Origin: Zootoca vivipara
Taxonomy: Eukaryota
Reading direction: 5' to 3'
Length of the DNA: 64,000 bases
Assembly (NCBI RefSeq): GCF_963506605.1
Contig: NC_083277.1
Location: forward strand, 44,144,001-44,208,000
Shown: positions 3,770 to 64,000 of the stretch, in pieces
Layout of the letters: every line of letters starts with the position of its first letter
How positions within the stretch are numbered: position 1 is the stretch's first letter
Notes under the pieces: generated by a model
Seen by the model: only the letters and a program-made list of their open reading frames with translations
Databases searched by the model: none
Told to the model about the DNA's origin: nothing
Made by a program: the position numbers and the translations under genes

Positions 3770-4240
3770 TTATTTTCTTTTTAAACATTTATACACCATC
3801 TTCCAAACAAAATCCCAAGGAGGCTAACACACTATGCAATAGACAAAACACATTGCAATAAATGAAAATGAAATCATAAATTCAGTAACTGGTACATTTC
3901 TCAAGGCCAGGCGTTTTACCTCCATGCCGCCGCCCAAATAAGCTCAGCTGAGGTGTGCAAGTGCACTTTCAAGATTAGCCAAAAACTCAACGAGGTTGGC
4001 ACCCACCTTATTTCCACGAGGACACAGCTCCATAAATTGGGCATTGCAACAGAGAAGGCCTTCCCTGGTTGCTACCAGATGCATTTCTGCAGACTGTAGT
4101 GCAAGCAAGAGGGCCTCATTCTGAGATCATACTGGCTACTCTGGTCTGAAGAGGTGAAGGCATCCCCTCAGATAGCCAGGTTCCAAGTTGTTCAGGGCTT
4201 CCTAAATCAGCAACTGAAGCTCACACTTGGCCCAGCAGAG
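3770..4240 (-). mobile_element. Old L2-like LINE 3' fragment
   Basis: Degenerate L2 motifs (acagagaaggccttcc, ccaagttgttcagggctt); boundaries approximate. Confidence 0.55.
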
Positions 4241-4389
4241 TTTTAGTGTCCTTTGTTTTGACACATGGAATCTGAACTAGAATGCAGAGAACTGGTGGGG
4301 AAGGGAAAGAAGGGACTATATAAAATTATGTGCATGGTTCTCTACTTCCGGTACTGCTTTCTTACATTGCCATATACGGTACTACTTAC

Positions 4390-4485
4390 TGATTAGTTAG
4401 CTGTTCCGGTCCCACAAACAAATTGACACGAGAAAGACCCGTCCGAGTTCCAAGGAAGGCAACTTCCACTCCCTTGTCTGAATTT
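4390..4485 (-). CDS. CACNA2D3: CACNA2D3 exon (~25), 96 nt: NSDKGVEVAFLGTRTGLSRVNLFVGPEQLTNQ
   Basis: cttcttcag|AAATTCA...CTAATCA|gtaagt; in frame with neighbouring exons. Confidence 0.97.
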
Positions 4486-4732
4486 CTGAAGAAGAGCAAC
4501 ACGCAAGGAAGAATTACATTTCCAGACGGTAAATGGTACGCAGATATTCTGAGGTCACAAGAAGTGCAAGCACAAACCAGGACTGCAATTTTAATCAGTT
4601 TTAATAAATATACTAATCAACTTAAGCTTTAACTGAAATTAAAATATTTCCCCAATTAATTAGTGGGAGTTGGACTGAAAGGATAAACTATTAAGCAGTC
4701 AACACAGATGCACAATCTCCCTTCCTCTAACC

Positions 4733-4868
4733 CAGGCATCCCCAAACTGTGGCCCTCCAGATGTTTTGGCCTACAACTCCCATGATCCCTAGCTAACAGG
4801 ACCAGTGGTCGGGGAAGATGGGAATTGTAGTCCAAAACATCTGGAGGGCCGAAGTTTGGGGATGCCTG
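4733..4868. mobile_element. 136-bp hAT MITE
   Basis: TIR caggcatccccaaact...agtttggggatgcctg; perfect 8-bp TSD ctctaacc (4725-4732 / 4869-4876). Confidence 0.93.
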
Positions 4869-4923
4869 CTCTAACCTATAGTTGTGTGCAAATGGCTGCT
4901 TGAAATTATCCGAATTATCCTAT

Positions 4924-5062
4924 ACATCTGAAGGCAGCCCTGTATAGGGAAGCTTTTATAAAGGTGAATGTTTTACTATGTTTTTATGTATGCTGGAAGC
5001 TGCCCAAAGTGGCTGGGGCAACCCAGTCAGATGGGTGGGGTATAAAACAAAACAAAACAAAA
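4924..5062 (+). mobile_element. L2 LINE 3' terminal fragment
   Basis: acatctgaaggcagccctgtatagggaagctttt...ggtggggtataa plus an A-rich tail; matches ~23990-24140. Confidence 0.8.
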
Positions 5063-6449: not shown

Positions 6450-6923
6450 TGTAAGGGGGACTCCCTACAGGGAGCCAGCCCCCATCATCCTAACGTCCAC
6501 CTCATCAAGTACAGAGAGCACCAGTGGTTCTGAAGCAGCCAGAGGGGGAGGAAGAGACTCAGAGGGGGAGAGAAATCAGAGTGAGGAACAATAGAAAGCT
6601 CAGGCGGAGGGATGCAGGCAGATGCTTGGGGATACTGCAGAGCCAGAGAACCGACTGCTGAGGGAGGAAACTGAAAGGGCATCACTCCTTCCGGCGCCAG
6701 AAATAAGGAGAGCACCGCAACGCAGGTCAAGGGGGTGGCGCTTCGGGGTGCCCAGACTACTTTGCTGGCGTAGGAACAGACGTACGCCATTGCCGGATTT
6801 TGATTCGGGATGAGAGGTCATGTTTTAAGCTGTTTCTACACTGTAAATAAATAGCACAATAAACTTCTTTGAAGACAAACTGGACTCTAGTTACTCTAGA
6901 GTAGCCACGCCGACCCTCTGACA
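6450..6923 (+). mobile_element. Solo LTR, Ty3/Gypsy, related to the LTR at 63309
   Basis: TGTAA...TGACA termini; perfect 5-bp TSD atcat (6445-6449 / 6924-6928); AATAAA signals at ~6846-6863; U5 motif gttactct..agtagcc shared with the 63309 LTR. Confidence 0.92.
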
Positions 6924-22233: not shown

Positions 22234-22768
22234 TGTTGTGACGTGGGGGTTCGTGATTTCAGCAAGCATTACCGCTCTCTGACATAGTATGCTGGAGACA
22301 GTTTCTCTAGTAACTCTTCTTTATTAAGGCAAACAAGACTGAGCCCTGAGGAGAGGGAAGCTACATTTATAGGGAAAGGGAACTTGCTTAAAAGGGATAC
22401 ATTTTGGAGGGAACAATATCAAGCAATCACAGTGCTGCCTTTTGGTGGAAACCAATAGGACTGAGGATCCAAATGCAGCAGTTTAAATGAACCAATAGTA
22501 CCGGTAGCTGTTCCTTCTGGAACCAAAAGTAGCTACTTTACCCCAGGCACCCCCAAACTTTACCCCAGGCACCCCCAAACGTCGGCCCTCCAGATGTTTT
22601 GGACTACAATTCCCATCATCCCTGACCACTGGTCCTGTTATCTAGGGGTCATGGGAGTTGTAGGCCAAAACATCTGGAGGGCTGCAGTTTGGGGGTGCCT
22701 GCTTTACCCTAATGTGAATACAGACAATAGTAATACAGATATAATATCCTTTGAATCAATACACAACA
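22234..22768 (-). mobile_element. Solo LTR (sense to the host gene) carrying an inserted hAT MITE
   Basis: Inverted termini tgttgtg...cacaaca; TSD acact/atact (1 mismatch); minus-strand ATTGG boxes, TATAAA at ~22366-22371, AATAAA at 22320-22325. Confidence 0.75.
22566..22701. mobile_element. 136-bp hAT MITE
   Basis: Same family as 4733-4868; TSD ctttaccc (22558-22565 / 22702-22709). Confidence 0.92.
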
Positions 22769-23290: not shown

Positions 23291-24170
23291 TGATTGAGAT
23301 TGAATCCTGACAAGACAGAAGTACTGTTTGTGGGGGACAGGAGGCGGGCGGGTGTGGAGGACTCCCTGGTCCTGAATGGGGTAACTGTGCCCCTGAAAGA
23401 CCAGGTGCGCAGCCTGGGAGTCATCTTAGACTCACAGCTGTCCATGGAGGCACAGGTCAACTCTGTGTCCAAGGCAGCTGTTTATCAGCTCCATCTGGTA
23501 CGCAGGCTGAGTCCCTACCTGCCCACTGACTGTCTCTCCAGAGTGGTGCATGCTCTAGTTATCTCTCGCTTGGACTACTGCAATGCGCTCTACGTGGGGC
23601 TACCTTTGAAGGTGACCCGGAAACTACAACTAATCCAGAATGCGGCAGCTAGACTGGTGACTGGGAGCGGCCGCCGAGACCACATAACACCGGTCCTGAA
23701 AGACCTACATTGGCTCCCAGTACGTTTCCGAACACAATTCAAAGTGTTGGTGTTGACCTTTAAAGCCCTAAACGGCCTCGGTCCGGTATACCTGAAGGAG
23801 CGTCTCCACCTCCATCGTTCTGCCCGGACACTGAGGTCCAGCTCCGAGGGCCTTCTGGCGGTTCCCTCACTACGAAAAGCCAAGTTACAGGGAACCAGGC
23901 AGAGGGCCTTCTCGGTAGTGGCACCCACCCTGTGGAATGCCCTCCCACTAGAGGTCAAAGAGAACAACAATTACCAGACCTTTAGAAGGCATCTCAAGGC
24001 AGCCCTGTTTAGGGAAGCTTTTAATGTTTAATGGATTTCTGTATTTTAATGTTTGATGGATTTCTGTATTTTAGAATTTCTGTTTTGTTGGAAGCTGCCC
24101 AGAGTGGCTGGGGGAACCCGGCCAGATGGGCGGGGTATAAATAATAAATTATTATTATTATTATTATTAT
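23291..24170 (+). mobile_element. 5'-truncated young L2 LINE; 245-codon open ORF2 C-terminal part (23294-24031), 3' UTR and (TTA)n tail
   Basis: LNPDKTE...LGVILDSQLSM...SRLDYCNALY...LQLIQNAAARL...HITPVL..LHWLPV are L2-clade ORF2 motifs. Confidence 0.93.
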
Positions 24171-29367: not shown

Positions 29368-30060
29368 AATAATAACAAATAATTTTATTATTTATACCCC
29401 GCCCACTCTGGGCAGCTTAAAGCATATCTAAAAACATAATAAAAACATCAAGCGTTAAAAACCTCCCAATACATAGCTGCCTTCAGATGTCTTCTAAAAT
29501 TATCTCTTTGACATCTGAAGGGAGGGTGTCACTACCTAGAAGGCCCTCCGCCTGGTTCCCTGTTGCTTTGCTTCTCACATTGAGGGAACCAGCAGAAGAC
29601 CCTTGGAGGAGGACCTCAGTGTCCAGGCTGAGTGATGGGGGCCGAGACCGTTTAGGGCTTTGAAGATCAGCACCAACACTTTGAATTGTGCTCAGAAACG
29701 TACTGGGAGCCAGTGAAGATCCTTTAGGGCCAGTGTTATATGGTCCCAATGGTCACTCCCAGCCACCAGTCTAGCTGCCGCATTCTAGATTAGTTGTAGT
29801 TTCCGAATCACTTTCAAAGGCAGCCCCACATAGAGTGCATTGCAGTAGTCCAAGCGGGAGATAACCAGGGCGTGCACAACTTGGGTGAAACAGTCTGTGG
29901 GCAGGTAGAGTCTAAGCCGGCGTACCAGATGGGAGTTGGTAGCCAGCTGCCCTGGACACAGAATTGACCTGCGCTTCCATGGACAGCTGTGGGTCCCAAA
30001 TGACTCCCAGGCTGCGCACCTGGTCTTTCAGGGGCACAGTTATCCTGTTCAGGACCAGGG
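29368..30060 (-). mobile_element. L2 LINE 3' portion with small deletions (same family as 23291-24170, inverted)
   Basis: ORF 29912..30094(-) DSLVLNRITVPLKDQVRSLGVIWDPQLSMEAQVNSVS closely matches the 23294 ORF. Confidence 0.92.
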
Positions 30061-32140
30061 AGTCTCCCCCTGCACCCCCCCCCCGGCAAACCAAATTATT
30101 AAACTGAAATGTGTTACTTTATTATCCCCTCCAGCAGCACCTTAGAGACCAACTAAGTTTGTCATCAATACCTTTGATACATTTAAGGAGGCATGGAGAA
30201 CACACACCTCTTTGCTCTTGGACAATAATAGTACTGGAGTCATGGATCGGAGTTAACATCTATATACGAGTTGATTTTTAGTAAAAAGCAGTTTACAGAA
30301 ATAGTTCAAAATCCTAAACACTCAATCATAATCACATTTACTTGGGAGCAAGTTCAAATGATTTCCAAAGAATGACTTGTGAATTTTCCTTGCTACACTC
30401 TTGGAGCAGTTTTCGCCTGCGCAAGGGCTTCCACTTACGTAAAATGGCTTCCCTCTCTTCCGATGCACAACCAAAATTGGGTCCAATATTTACTATTCTG
30501 TTCCATTTTACTAGCCCCACTGGGAGGGTGACAGGTCCCTCAACCCTAAAGTAGCGGATCAACTGCTTTTTCAAGACCAACGTCTTAATGCGGTATCAAC
30601 ATGAAATTGGCTACGACTCAGAACTGGAAGCATTTACACATGCTATTAAACTTTATTAGAGCGAATAGTCCCACAGAAATAAGTTTAAAGCTGTATGAGT
30701 CCAATAAGCAAACTGAGAAACCTACACCTCAACTGAAACCAGATTTTACTGAAAAGGCGCACTGATTTCAATAGTTATGAGAGCCAAAATTCCATATTAA
30801 GAGGCGGTAAACTTTTAATTGCCTCTGATTTATACTAGCACACTATTTGGACCAGAATACATCTGAATTAAGTCCCATTTGTTTCATTTGGATTTATTTC
30901 TCAGTCCATAGAAAAATTTTGACAGTATGAGGAGAATCATCCTGAATATAGTTGGCATTTTAATTTAAAACACTTCCAATGTTATTTATACAGTATGGGC
31001 CTAATTTTGTCCCACTTGCAATGTTCATGCTGATACATGGTGGCTGAAAAATTTATAACCGAGGGAGAAAGATTGTGTACATAAACTTGGCTTTGGAGCT
31101 GGCATCATTGCATCTACCACAACAAGGCACTTTACATGGAACATAGGTTAAAGAATGGTTAGAAGGGTCCTTTGGATGAAAACAAGGGAGCTCAATTATT
31201 GATGAGGAGCTTTGGATGGTCCAAGCATAGAACACAGGGCAGCTTGCCAGGTAGCTTGTGAGAACCACTGAAAATCTGAGTGTATGTGTGCTCACACTGA
31301 AAGCCCAAATGGTGTAGGCTTTTAAGGGTGCAGTCCTAACCGGAGCAAGAGTGTGCAGTGGCAGATTCCTTGCTGTTGGCTCCTGCTGGCTGAGGCAGAA
31401 GGCGAGGGAAGAGATGCTGTACCTATTTTGCTGGGCCAGCTTCAGGCTGCTGCAGCACAGGGGTCCAAAACTAGGCTCCTCTCCAGGAACTGTGTTTGCT
31501 TTGATCCATTGCCAGCCCAGCTCTGCCTTCTCTTCCCCAAATCACCCCGAGGACCTACTGCTGGTTTCTGCTGCTTCAAATACCACCTTTGGCAAGGGCC
31601 TCTGCAATGGTGCAGCCCACTGCTGGTGAAGCCTGTCAGGAGGGCACCTCCTAACCATAGCGAGCAGCACAAACTGGGATTATTCTGCCAAAATTCTAAA
31701 TTGATTGGGTCTCTCAAAGCAGTTACTCCCTTATAAGCCTTCATTCATCCCAATTTTTTTCATCACTTGGGGGAGAGGAACTAGGGGGGGATGCCAATGC
31801 TCTTCAAAGTTTTAGGAAGAGTCTGGACAATTTTAGAGGTGTAAATGAAGTGACTGAGTGACATTCACTCACTAAAAAGAAAAACTAAGTTAATGATTGA
31901 AGTGGCTGGACTCAGCATGTGAGAATGTCCCTGTGAATGATACTATGTCAGGATGTAGGGTAACAAAATACATTATTTGAATTGTTCCTTTTATTTCACT
32001 GGGAAATAATTATTTGTAAAGGGCTTGGGACTCTCTCTCTCTCTCTCTGTGTGTATGGGGTGCCCACCTAAGAATGTATTTTTTTTACAAATATATATGT
32101 GTGTTATATCTGTAATTTTTTACAAATATGTGTATGTATA

Positions 32141-36827: not shown

Positions 36828-36963
36828 CAGGCACCCCCAAACTTTGGCCCTCCAGATGTTTTGGACTACAATTCCCATCTTCCCCGACCACTGGTCCTGT
36901 TAGCTAGGGATCATGGGAGTTGTAGGCCAAAACATCTGGAGGGCCGCAGTTTGGGGATGCCTG
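36828..36963. mobile_element. 136-bp hAT MITE
   Basis: Same family as 4733-4868; TSD atctagca / atctaaca. Confidence 0.92.
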
Positions 36964-60772: not shown

Positions 60773-61208
60773 TGGCCGCCGAGACCACATAACAGTGGTC
60801 TTGAAAGATCTACATTGGCTCCCAGTACGTTTCCGAGCACAGTTCAAAGTGTTGGTGCTGACCTTTAAAGCCCTAAATGGCCTCGGTCCAGTATACCTGA
60901 AGGAGCGTCTCCACCCCCATCATTCTGCCCGGACACTGAGGTCCAGTGCTGAAGGCCTTCTGGCGGTTCCCTCGTTGCAAGAAGCCAAGTTGCAGGGAAC
61001 CAGGCAGAGGGCCTTCTTGGTAGTGGTACCTGCCCTGTGGAATACCCTCCCACCAGATGTCAAAGAGAAAAACAGCTACCAGATTTTTAGAAGACATCTG
61101 AAGGCATCCCTGTTTAGAGAGGCTTTTAATCTTTAATCGATTATTTTATTCTTCTGTTGGAAGCCGCCCAGAGTGGCTGGGGAAACCAAGCCAGATGGGC
61201 GGGGTATA

Positions 61209-61253
<45 letters not shown>
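60773..61253 (+). mobile_element. 5'-truncated L2 LINE with (AAT)n tail
   Basis: GRRDHIT..LKDLHWLPVRFRAQFKVLVLTFKALNG...FREAFN, nearly identical to the C-terminus of the 23294 ORF. Confidence 0.93.
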
Positions 61254-62920: not shown

Positions 62921-63308
62921 AAAATTAACTCAACTAAAAGATATCATGGAACTCTAGTGCTGAGCAGAATTCTCATGCCTTGAACAAATGATTAGAAGGT
63001 CATCCAAACAAGGACCACTGAGATTCTTTCTGAAAAGAAAGAAATCAAATAACAAAAAGGTGCCAGGCTGAAAACTGTTTTGCTATATGTATCATGCCAT
63101 TTGACTAAAGAGAGAATATTATCCCAAAGTCTCTAGTTTGGTTATGATGTACTGTTAGATTATGTGCTATGGAACATCTAATAAGATATGTAAATAAAGA
63201 GGCTTTACCAAAGCCAAGCTGTTCAGGGTTTAAGATTAATTCCTTCCCAACTAGGCCTAATCTTCCCTGATTGGCCAATAACGGCAAAGAAGACACTCAG
63301 AAGCCCTC

Positions 63309-63736
63309 TGTGAGGGACAGGGGATATCGCGAAGTCCCTCCCCTCCTGAGTTCAAGCCCAGCCCCGAGCACAGGGGAAAGCAGAGGAAGCTCCGAGTCCA
63401 GCGGGGAAGCAGGAAGTCGGGTCCGAGGCTCAGGCAAGGTAGCGGAGCCAGGGTCCCAGGTGGAACAGGAAGGGGCCAAGAAGGAGGGGAGACCCATCCC
63501 CCCAACTCCAGAATTACGCAGGAAGAGGAGGGGAAAGAGGATGGGGCTTCCAAAGCTTTTGTGTTGGGGAAAGACGCGCCAAAAGTCATTCGGAGGTTCT
63601 GAAAGCGACTGACAACATCACTCTGTGTAAATAGCAATGAATTCCTCACTGTAAATACGCAGCACCAATAAAAGAATAAAATGCAGAGCTGCGTAGCGTC
63701 GTTACTCTGAAGTAGCCTGATCCGGCCACTGTGACA
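63309..63736 (+). mobile_element. 5' LTR (428 bp) of a Ty3/Gypsy retrotransposon, Tf1/sushi-like
   Basis: TGTGA...TGACA termini; AATAAA at 63667 and 63675; homologous to solo LTR 6450-6923; followed by a short leader and a gag-like ORF. Confidence 0.9.
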
Positions 63737-63738
63737 GC

Positions 63739-63749
63739 AACCTCCGAAT
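63739..63749 (+). promoter_or_regulatory. Putative self-priming primer-binding site (AACCTCCGAAT)
   Basis: Exact reverse complement of ATTCGGAGGTT at 63588-63598 inside the LTR; no TGG tRNA-type PBS after the LTR. Confidence 0.75.
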
Positions 63750-63779
63750 CTTTTTTTGGGCTACTTTGGAGTTGCCGGG

Positions 63780-64000
63780 ATGAGTGCATCAGAGGCGGAG
63801 AAATGGCGGCAGATCGCGGAGAAAGCCCAACAGGACCTGCAGCAGCTGACGTTGGAGGCGCAGGGGGAATTAAGGGCAGCTAAAGAAGAAACCAAGAAAC
63901 TCCAAGACGACCGGGTACAACTTGCGGAACAGGTGAGAGCGCTCCAGGAAAGAGAGCAGCAATTAAGGGCGGTGGCGGTAGACCTCCAAAACAAACTGGA
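63780..64000 (+). CDS. Gag N-terminus (coiled coil) of the Gypsy element, runs off the window: MSASEAEKWRQIAEKAQQDLQQLTLEAQGELRAAKEETKKLQDDRVQLAEQVRALQEREQQLRAVAVDLQNKL...
   Basis: ATG 44 nt after the LTR end; 73 codons without a stop to the window edge; heptad E/Q/L/A-rich pattern. Confidence 0.8.
   Translation, partial: MSASEAEKWRQIAEKAQQDLQQLTLEAQGELRAAKEETKKLQDDRVQLAEQVRALQEREQQLRAVAVDLQNKL

What the first reader, a model, noticed from the sequence alone, without database searches (positions are those of the whole stretch)
63586..63772. Young Gypsy element with a tRNA-independent self-priming layout (Tf1/sushi type)
Seen: after the LTR end (TGACA, 63736) there is no TGG tRNA PBS. Instead 63739-63749 (AACCTCCGAAT) is the exact 11-nt reverse complement of 63588-63598 (ATTCGGAGGTT) within the LTR. 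The first A of that 11-mer is the +1 of an initiator-like TCA+1TTC. U5 63704-63720 (ACTCTGAAGTAGCCTGA) can also pair over 17 contiguous positions, 4 of them G-U, with leader 63756-63772 (TTGGGCTACTTTGGAGT). Established: S. pombe Tf1 primes reverse transcription with the first 11 nt of its own mRNA and needs a U5-leader stem; vertebrate Tf1/sushi-group elements were proposed to do the same. Inference: this is a recent self-priming element in a reptile (CpGs retained, gag open), inserted antisense in a CACNA2D3 intron.
Basis: partly seen in the sequence, partly recalled or inferred. Interest (0 to 1): 0.8.

Follow-up and report, generated by a model that had tools for sequence, protein, structure and literature searches.

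The report
Self-priming lizard Gypsy retrotransposon 5' end
This is the left end of a young, high-copy, transcribed Gypsy-type jumping gene in a lizard whose primer site matches its own LTR rather than a tRNA, a layout already proposed for related fish and fungal elements, so it is a further example and not a new mechanism.

Summary
A 428-bp LTR (63309-63736, TG..CA, left duplication ccctc) is followed by a 2-nt spacer. Then comes an 11-mer (63739-63749) that is the exact reverse complement of 63588-63598 inside the LTR (about 1e-3 by shuffle, about 1e-4 for that fixed position). The U5-leader stem exists, but its two outer pairs vary among copies. Gag starts at 63780 and is open to the window end.

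Reads from the same species show:
- The LTR borders are shared by very many copies.
- The family is high-copy, has copies at least 99% alike, and is transcribed on the sense strand.
- RNA 3' ends pile up at 63684, just after the AATAAA signals.

The predicted transcription start at 63588 could not be resolved. Covariation among copies and an RT/integrase tree could not be done, because the tool that fetches DNA around a protein was closed and all collection scans were blank.

The only protein relative is a Zootoca vivipara gag. It has a PEG10/RTL-type capsid domain and a CCHC knuckle, which fits a sushi-like chromovirus.

The scan has already noted this same layout on at least 16 other stretches of this genome. 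Self-priming is the published common feature of the Tf1/sushi group, so this is a new member of a known kind. Function is inferred, not shown.

The parts
63304..63308 (+). Left target-site duplication candidate (ccctc). The right copy lies beyond the window.
   Evidence: Sequence. A related solo LTR at 6450-6923 has a 5-bp duplication on both sides.
63309..63736 (+). 5' LTR, 428 bp, TG..CA
   Evidence: Reads of many copies break into unlike flanks at 63308/63309 and at 63736/63737. Word depth jumps from 3.2 to above 10,000 at 63309.
63309..63587 (+). Inferred U3. One frame is open from 63271 to the TGA at 63610-12.
   Evidence: Inference from the primer position. ORF. Protein-level match to the solo LTR at 6628-6783.
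63588..63598 (+). Proposed self-primer, the inferred start of R
   Evidence: Exact 11-nt complement of the PBS. None of the 40 listed variants falls at 63565-63602 (104 variants not shown), while variants lie just outside. The start site is not mapped.
63667..63680 (+). Two AATAAA poly(A) signals (63667-72 and 63675-80)
   Evidence: The block is conserved in the diverged solo LTR.
63684..63684 (+). Likely poly(A) cleavage site, the R/U5 border
   Evidence: In run X13, 19 molecule ends fall at 63684. Sense depth is 53 on the left and 14 on the right. The reading of 'begin' as the RNA 3' end is my inference.
63704..63720 (+). U5 arm of the U5-leader stem. The core is 63704-63718.
   Evidence: The motif TTACTCT..AGTAGCC is conserved in the solo LTR. 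63719 and 63720 vary among copies.
63737..63738 (+). 2-nt spacer (GC) between the LTR's CA end and the PBS
   Evidence: Sequence. This is the canonical geometry of LTR elements (established knowledge).
63739..63749 (+). Primer-binding site complementary to 63588-63598
   Evidence: Length changes among copies occur right after 63749 and none is listed inside it.
63756..63772 (+). Leader arm of the U5-leader stem
63780..64000 (+). Start of gag (coiled-coil N-terminus), 73 codons open and cut by the window end
   Evidence: 88% identical to residues 1-73 of P0001, a 408-aa gag with Retrotrans_gag, Ty3_capsid, DUF4939 and a CCHC knuckle.

Best explanation
This is the 5' end of a young copy of a high-copy, transcribed Ty3/Gypsy LTR retrotransposon of a lacertid-type lizard. 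It is most likely a sushi-like (vertebrate 'V-clade') chromovirus that starts reverse transcription by Tf1-type self-priming.

Proposed working (inferred unless marked):
- Transcription starts at or just upstream of 63588 (not shown) and ends near 63684 after the AATAAA signals (supported by reads). That gives an R of about 97 nt and a U5 of about 52 nt.
- The 5' 11 nt of the RNA fold back onto the PBS at 63739-49. A U5-leader stem (63704-18 with 63758-72) crosses this duplex and holds the 'pretzel'.
- RNase H cuts after 63598. The freed 3'-OH is extended across GC and U5-R to make minus-strand strong-stop DNA.
- The 2-nt spacer gives the usual CA+2 end for integrase processing.
For: - Exact 11-nt complement placed at +3 after the LTR (p about 1e-3 for any place, about 1e-4 for the fixed position).
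- LTR borders confirmed on many copies.
- No TGG-type PBS next to the LTR. No tRNA-like Rfam hit at E up to 10 in 63560-63800. No tRNA gene in the window.
- U5-leader stem of -23.1 kcal/mol; the best U5/leader duplex is beaten by 2.6% of shuffles. Its U5 arm is conserved in a diverged LTR family.
- The minimum-energy fold pairs the 5' end with the PBS.
- None of the 40 best-supported variant places falls in the primer, the PBS or the stem core, though they flank each closely (about 3 expected).
- Sense RNA runs continuously from U5 through the PBS into gag in run X15. RNA 3' ends fall at 63684.
- The gag relative carries DUF4939, Retrotrans_gag, Ty3_capsid and CCHC. The nearest Atlas clusters are PEG10, RTL and Tf2-type gags.
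- Literature: self-priming and the three-duplex pretzel are the common feature of Tf1/sushi elements, vertebrate ones included (bioRxiv 10.1101/2022.12.06.519325; PMC6317226; PMC4600332). Active Metaviridae persist in reptiles (PMC3670739).
Against: - The start site is unmapped. No pile of read ends and no rise in depth appears at 63588.
- There is no TATA box about 30 nt upstream of 63588. TAAATA motifs lie only downstream, at 63628 and 63652. The initiator match is imperfect.
- The third pretzel duplex is at chance level, and the whole-leader fold has z = -1.7.
- Conservation of 63565-63602 could come from an ORF that runs through U3 to the TGA at 63610-12 and not from priming.
- 104 variant places were not shown by the reads tool.
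- No covariation, no pol, no chromodomain and no RT tree could be examined.
- Self-priming has never been demonstrated experimentally in a vertebrate element (my knowledge).
Confidence: 0.78

Rival explanations
1. The R-start/PBS complement is a long-range RNA structure, for example for packaging, dimerisation or translation control. The real primer is another host RNA.
For: Retroviral leaders also form U5-leader and U5-PBS interactions (established knowledge). The start site is unmapped. The fold as a whole is not exceptional.
Against: The complement sits exactly where a PBS must sit, CA + 2 nt. It has the same 11-nt length as in Tf1. No other primer site is visible.
Confidence: 0.1
2. The element is primed by a tRNA or tRNA fragment from a displaced PBS, for example the TGG at 63757-59 inside the leader arm, or from an internal tRNA half.
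For: TGG followed by 14 nt exists at 63757. Half-tRNA priming is known in some copia lineages (PMC6317226). No vertebrate tRNA set was available for a proper scan.
Against: That TGG lies 20 nt from the LTR end, where a minus-strand start would add a foreign tail to the LTR. The implied acceptor stem would be A/T-rich, unlike cytosolic tRNAs (my knowledge). There is no tRNA-like Rfam match at E up to 10 on either strand. The stretch is fully explained as the partner of the U5 arm.
Confidence: 0.05
3. The match arose by chance in one copy, and priming is unknown or the family is dead.
For: Energy-based shuffles give only p about 0.02-0.03 for each duplex.
Against: An exact 11-mer has p about 1e-3 to 1e-4. 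The segment is invariant among the listed variants of a multi-copy, expressed family. The scan's unchecked notes report the same layout in many other copies of this genome.
Confidence: 0.04

Closest known systems
Tf1 of Schizosaccharomyces pombe (with Tf2, Tj1, Tosmo, Tcry1)
   Same: An 11-nt self-primer complementary to a PBS just after the 5' LTR. A U5 sequence pairs with sequence just 3' of the PBS and crosses the primer-PBS duplex ('pretzel').
   Different: Here the mechanism is only inferred. The third duplex is not evident. The U5-leader stem is long, about 15-17 bp. The host is an amniote. The gag relative has a CCHC knuckle, which fission-yeast Tf elements lack.
sushi-ichi and Amn-type vertebrate chromoviruses (V-clade; Butler et al. 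2001, cited; V-clade named in PMC2774666)
   Same: Vertebrate Gypsy elements proposed to self-prime. The gag is of the type that gave rise to PEG10/RTL (DUF4939).
   Different: Membership could not be tested: no RT, integrase or chromodomain lies in the window. By word search the gag has no relative of 224-714 aa in the protein collection other than one Zootoca entry.
Retroviral U5-IR / U5-leader stem around the PBS
   Same: A U5 sequence pairs with leader sequence flanking the PBS.
   Different: Retroviruses use a tRNA on an 18-nt TGG-type PBS. Here the PBS is 11 nt and matches the element's own LTR.

Membership tests
Ty3/Gypsy (Metaviridae) LTR retrotransposon | LTR with TG..CA ends shared by many copies, short target duplication, leader followed by gag | tested here: met
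   A 5-bp duplication is seen on both sides of the related solo LTR. Only the left duplication of this copy is visible.
Ty3/Gypsy (Metaviridae) LTR retrotransposon | Gag with a Ty3-type capsid and CCHC knuckle | tested here: met
   Tested on relative P0001, 88% identical over the 73 residues the window holds. PF03732 E = 6.6e-16, PF19259 E = 7.6e-11, a CX2CX4HX4C motif.
Tf1/sushi group of chromoviruses | PBS complementary to the element's own LTR, not to a tRNA 3' end | tested here: met
   Exact 11-nt complement at +3 after the LTR. No TGG-type PBS adjacent. No tRNA-like hit.
Tf1/sushi group of chromoviruses | The complementary segment is the very 5' end of the mRNA | tested here: inconclusive
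   RNA reads show no pile of ends or step in depth at 63588. Standard RNA-seq rarely reaches true 5' ends.
Tf1/sushi group of chromoviruses | Three-duplex 'pretzel' in the 5' UTR | tested here: inconclusive
   Two duplexes are present and crossing. The third is no better than shuffles (frac 0.46).
Tf1/sushi group of chromoviruses | RT/RNase H/integrase sequences fall inside the Tf1/sushi clade | not testable with these tools
Collection scans were blank.
Tf1/sushi group of chromoviruses | Chromodomain at the integrase C-terminus | not testable with these tools
   Not in the window. Unchecked scan notes report a degenerate chromodomain in Gypsy copies of this genome.
Tf1/sushi group of chromoviruses | Primer and PBS co-vary among diverged family members | not testable with these tools
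   The only diverged relative on hand is a solo LTR without a PBS.

The most novel reading that the evidence does not exclude
A currently active, very high-copy self-priming chromovirus family in an amniote. Its self-primer also lies inside the last codons of an integrase ORF that runs through U3 into R, so the same 11 nt would be constrained both as primer and as coding sequence. That would give a tractable vertebrate system for testing Tf1-type self-priming on endogenous RNA and cDNA.
Probability: 0.3. Interest if true: 0.45.

Novelty: new member of a known kind. Interest (0 to 1): 0.27.

Why it matters
Self-priming has been proven only in fission yeast and merely proposed for vertebrate sushi-like elements. 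A young, expressed, high-copy lizard family offers natural material for checking it in an amniote: mapping RNA 5' ends, looking for strong-stop cDNA, and comparing subfamilies. It is also relevant to the ancestry of PEG10/RTL genes. It does not change the known picture.

Tried and rejected
- Other copies in the window: none by blastn.
- Short-fragment protein search with the 73-aa gag start: nothing.
- Word searches with the full Zootoca gag and with its capsid region: only the query itself. The second was run at a strict E of 1e-5.
- The look-up of encoding contigs: closed, so no DNA around the relative.
- Protein-guided scans of viral and metagenome contigs, and DNA-pattern scans of metagenome, bacterial-genome and viral contigs: all blank.
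- PDB sequence search: PEG10 capsid at E = 0.13 and Ty3 at E = 2.5, neither significant.
- Rfam at E up to 10: only chance-level hits, none tRNA-like.
- The papers of Levin 1995, Lin & Levin 1998 and Butler 2001 are not held.
- A start site at 63684 behind the TAAATA at 63652 was considered and rejected. Sense depth is higher to the left of 63684 than to the right, so it is an RNA 3' end.
- The CACNA2D3 context was not tested.

Full report
**1. Observation**

- The LTR runs 63309-63736 (TG..CA, 428 bp), with ccctc on its left.
- GC (63737-38) follows the terminal CA. Then comes an 11-mer (63739-49) that is the exact reverse complement of 63588-98.
- The complement does not extend on either side as perfect pairing. 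With one bulged C, three more pairs form (63599-601 with 63735-37).
- In 20,000 shuffles of the LTR, a complement of at least 11 nt to any part of the 20 nt after the LTR arose 22 times. For the fixed 11-mer at +3 the expectation is about 1e-4.
- The U5/leader pairing (63704-20 with 63756-72; 13 Watson-Crick and 4 G-U pairs) is real. Its energy is -23.1 kcal/mol. The best duplex in that region is beaten by 2.6% of shuffles.
- The two duplexes cross each other, which is the published 'pretzel' topology.
- The third duplex of that scheme is at chance level. The whole leader fold has z = -1.7.
- The gag ATG is at 63780. Seventy-three codons are open to the window end.

**2. Evidence from reads of the same species**

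Both read tools are capped at one call and were used on 63100-64000, with three raw RNA runs and one contig run.

- *LTR borders.* Reads and contigs break into many unlike flanks at 63308/63309 and at 63736/63737. The LTR borders are therefore those of a large family.
- *Copy number.* Word depth rises from 3.2 in the flank to 10,000-56,000 in the LTR and about 4,000-5,000 in gag. This is a very abundant family with an excess of LTRs (solo LTRs or non-autonomous derivatives). The tool warns that this depth is not a copy number.
- *Youth.* 231 contigs, and 141 RNA reads in X15, are at least 99% alike.
- *Transcription.* RNA lies almost wholly in the orientation that means sense-strand RNA in standard stranded libraries. 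In X15 it runs on from U5 through the PBS into gag at about 40-65x. In X13 and X14 it stops inside the LTR.
- *Poly(A) site.* In X13, 19 molecule ends fall at 63684, with depth 53 to the left and 14 to the right. I read this as the poly(A) site, just after the AATAAA signals at 63667 and 63675. R would then be about 63588-63684 and U5 about 63685-63736.
- *Start site.* No pile of ends and no step in depth marks 63588, so the predicted start site is neither supported nor refuted.
- *Variants.* None of the 40 best-supported variant places (of 144) falls in the primer, the PBS or the stem core. They lie close by, at 63564, 63603, 63605, 63719 and 63720, and there are length changes right after 63749. 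About three would be expected by chance in those 52 nt, so this is weak support.
- *Subfamilies.* Other subfamilies keep the sequence up to 63601 and then replace 63602-63646 entirely.

**3. What the element is**

- The exhaustive representative search with the 73 residues found one true relative, P0001. It is 88% identical over residues 1-73 and 408 aa long.
- P0001 is a Zootoca vivipara entry that NCBI names 'lysophospholipase-like protein 1 isoform X1'.
- It is in fact a gag. It carries Retrotrans_gag, Ty3_capsid, DUF4939 and a CX2CX4HX4C knuckle.
- The Atlas places it nearest to PEG10, RTL and Tf2-type gag clusters. This is a lead, not a test. PDB sequence hits are not significant.
- CpG observed/expected is 0.56 in the LTR, 0.96 in R-U5 and 0.75 in leader plus gag. 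It is 0.27 for the window and 0.22 for the flank. This fits a recent insertion.

**4. What could not be done**

- Protein word searches returned only P0001.
- Scans of viral, metagenome and prokaryote-genome contigs were blank.
- So there is no DNA of other full-length copies, no pol, no chromodomain, no RT tree and no covariation test.
- The tRNA test was only indirect. There is no tRNA gene in the window, no tRNA-like Rfam match at E up to 10, and no TGG near the LTR end.
- The CACNA2D3 claim was not tested.

**5. Mechanism**

The best reading is Tf1-type self-priming.

- The RNA's first 11 nt anneal to the PBS, held by the crossing U5-leader stem.
- RNase H cuts after 63598.
- Extension copies GC, U5 and R.
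- The 2-nt spacer gives the standard CA+2 end.

Strictly, the mechanism needs the start site to be at or upstream of 63588, not exactly on it. All steps after the sequence layout are inferred.

One confound remains. One frame is open through U3 to the TGA at 63610-12, and it matches a diverged solo LTR at protein level. Conservation around the primer may therefore be partly a coding constraint.

**6. Comparison and novelty**

- Self-priming with a pretzel structure is described as the common feature of the Tf1/sushi group in fungi, vertebrates and some non-seed plants.
- Active Metaviridae lineages are reported in reptiles. The V-clade of vertebrate chromoviruses is defined in PMC2774666.
- The searches found no paper that describes self-priming in a lizard element.
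- The scan itself has already noted the same layout on at least 16 other stretches of this genome. These are unchecked and not independent, because they are copies of one family.

Verdict: a new member of a known kind. The layout is confirmed, the function is inferred, and group membership is untested.

Noticed in passing
window 6450-6923: Solo LTR of a diverged related family, TG..CA, with ATCAT duplicated on both sides (6445-49 and 6924-28). It shares with the studied LTR the blocks CACTGTAAATA, the AATAAA region, the U5 arm TTACTCT..AGTAGCC and an ATTCGG near the end of the U3 ORF.
   Followed up: partly
window 63271-63612 (+), compared with 6628-6813: One frame is open through the whole U3 and stops at the TGA at 63610-12, 12 nt after the proposed primer. 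Its product matches the solo LTR at 37% over 54 aa (E = 3e-6), although the DNA barely aligns. The solo LTR's frame also stops just after its ATTCGG. This fits unchecked scan notes that the integrase ORF runs through U3.
   Followed up: partly
P0001 (XP_060128974.1, Zootoca vivipara): A public protein named 'lysophospholipase-like protein 1 isoform X1' is a Gypsy gag (Retrotrans_gag, Ty3_capsid, DUF4939, CCHC). This is probably a gene-model artefact.
   Followed up: yes
window 63602-63646: Reads and contigs of at least two other subfamilies keep the sequence up to 63601 and resume at about 63625-63647, but carry unrelated letters in between. This is a hypervariable block just behind the primer and the ORF's stop.
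   Followed up: no
window 63717-63736 and beyond (contigs of run X12): Three contigs share an LTR-end variant followed by GGAAGCAAAAT where this copy has GC plus the PBS. The complement of its last 9 nt differs by one base from ATTTTGATT at 6797-6805 of the solo LTR. It may be a subfamily with a different primer/PBS pair. Unexplained.
   Followed up: no
window 4733-4868, 22566-22701, 36828-36963: A 136-bp repeat is present three times at 93-98% identity. The copies also align to one another at about 81-82% in the opposite orientation, so the unit is itself largely palindromic. It may be a small hairpin-forming mobile element.
   Followed up: no
window 23360-24169, 29397-30064, 60774-61239, 677-894: Several copies of another interspersed repeat at 69-82% identity. 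One (23294-24031) carries a 245-aa ORF.
   Followed up: no
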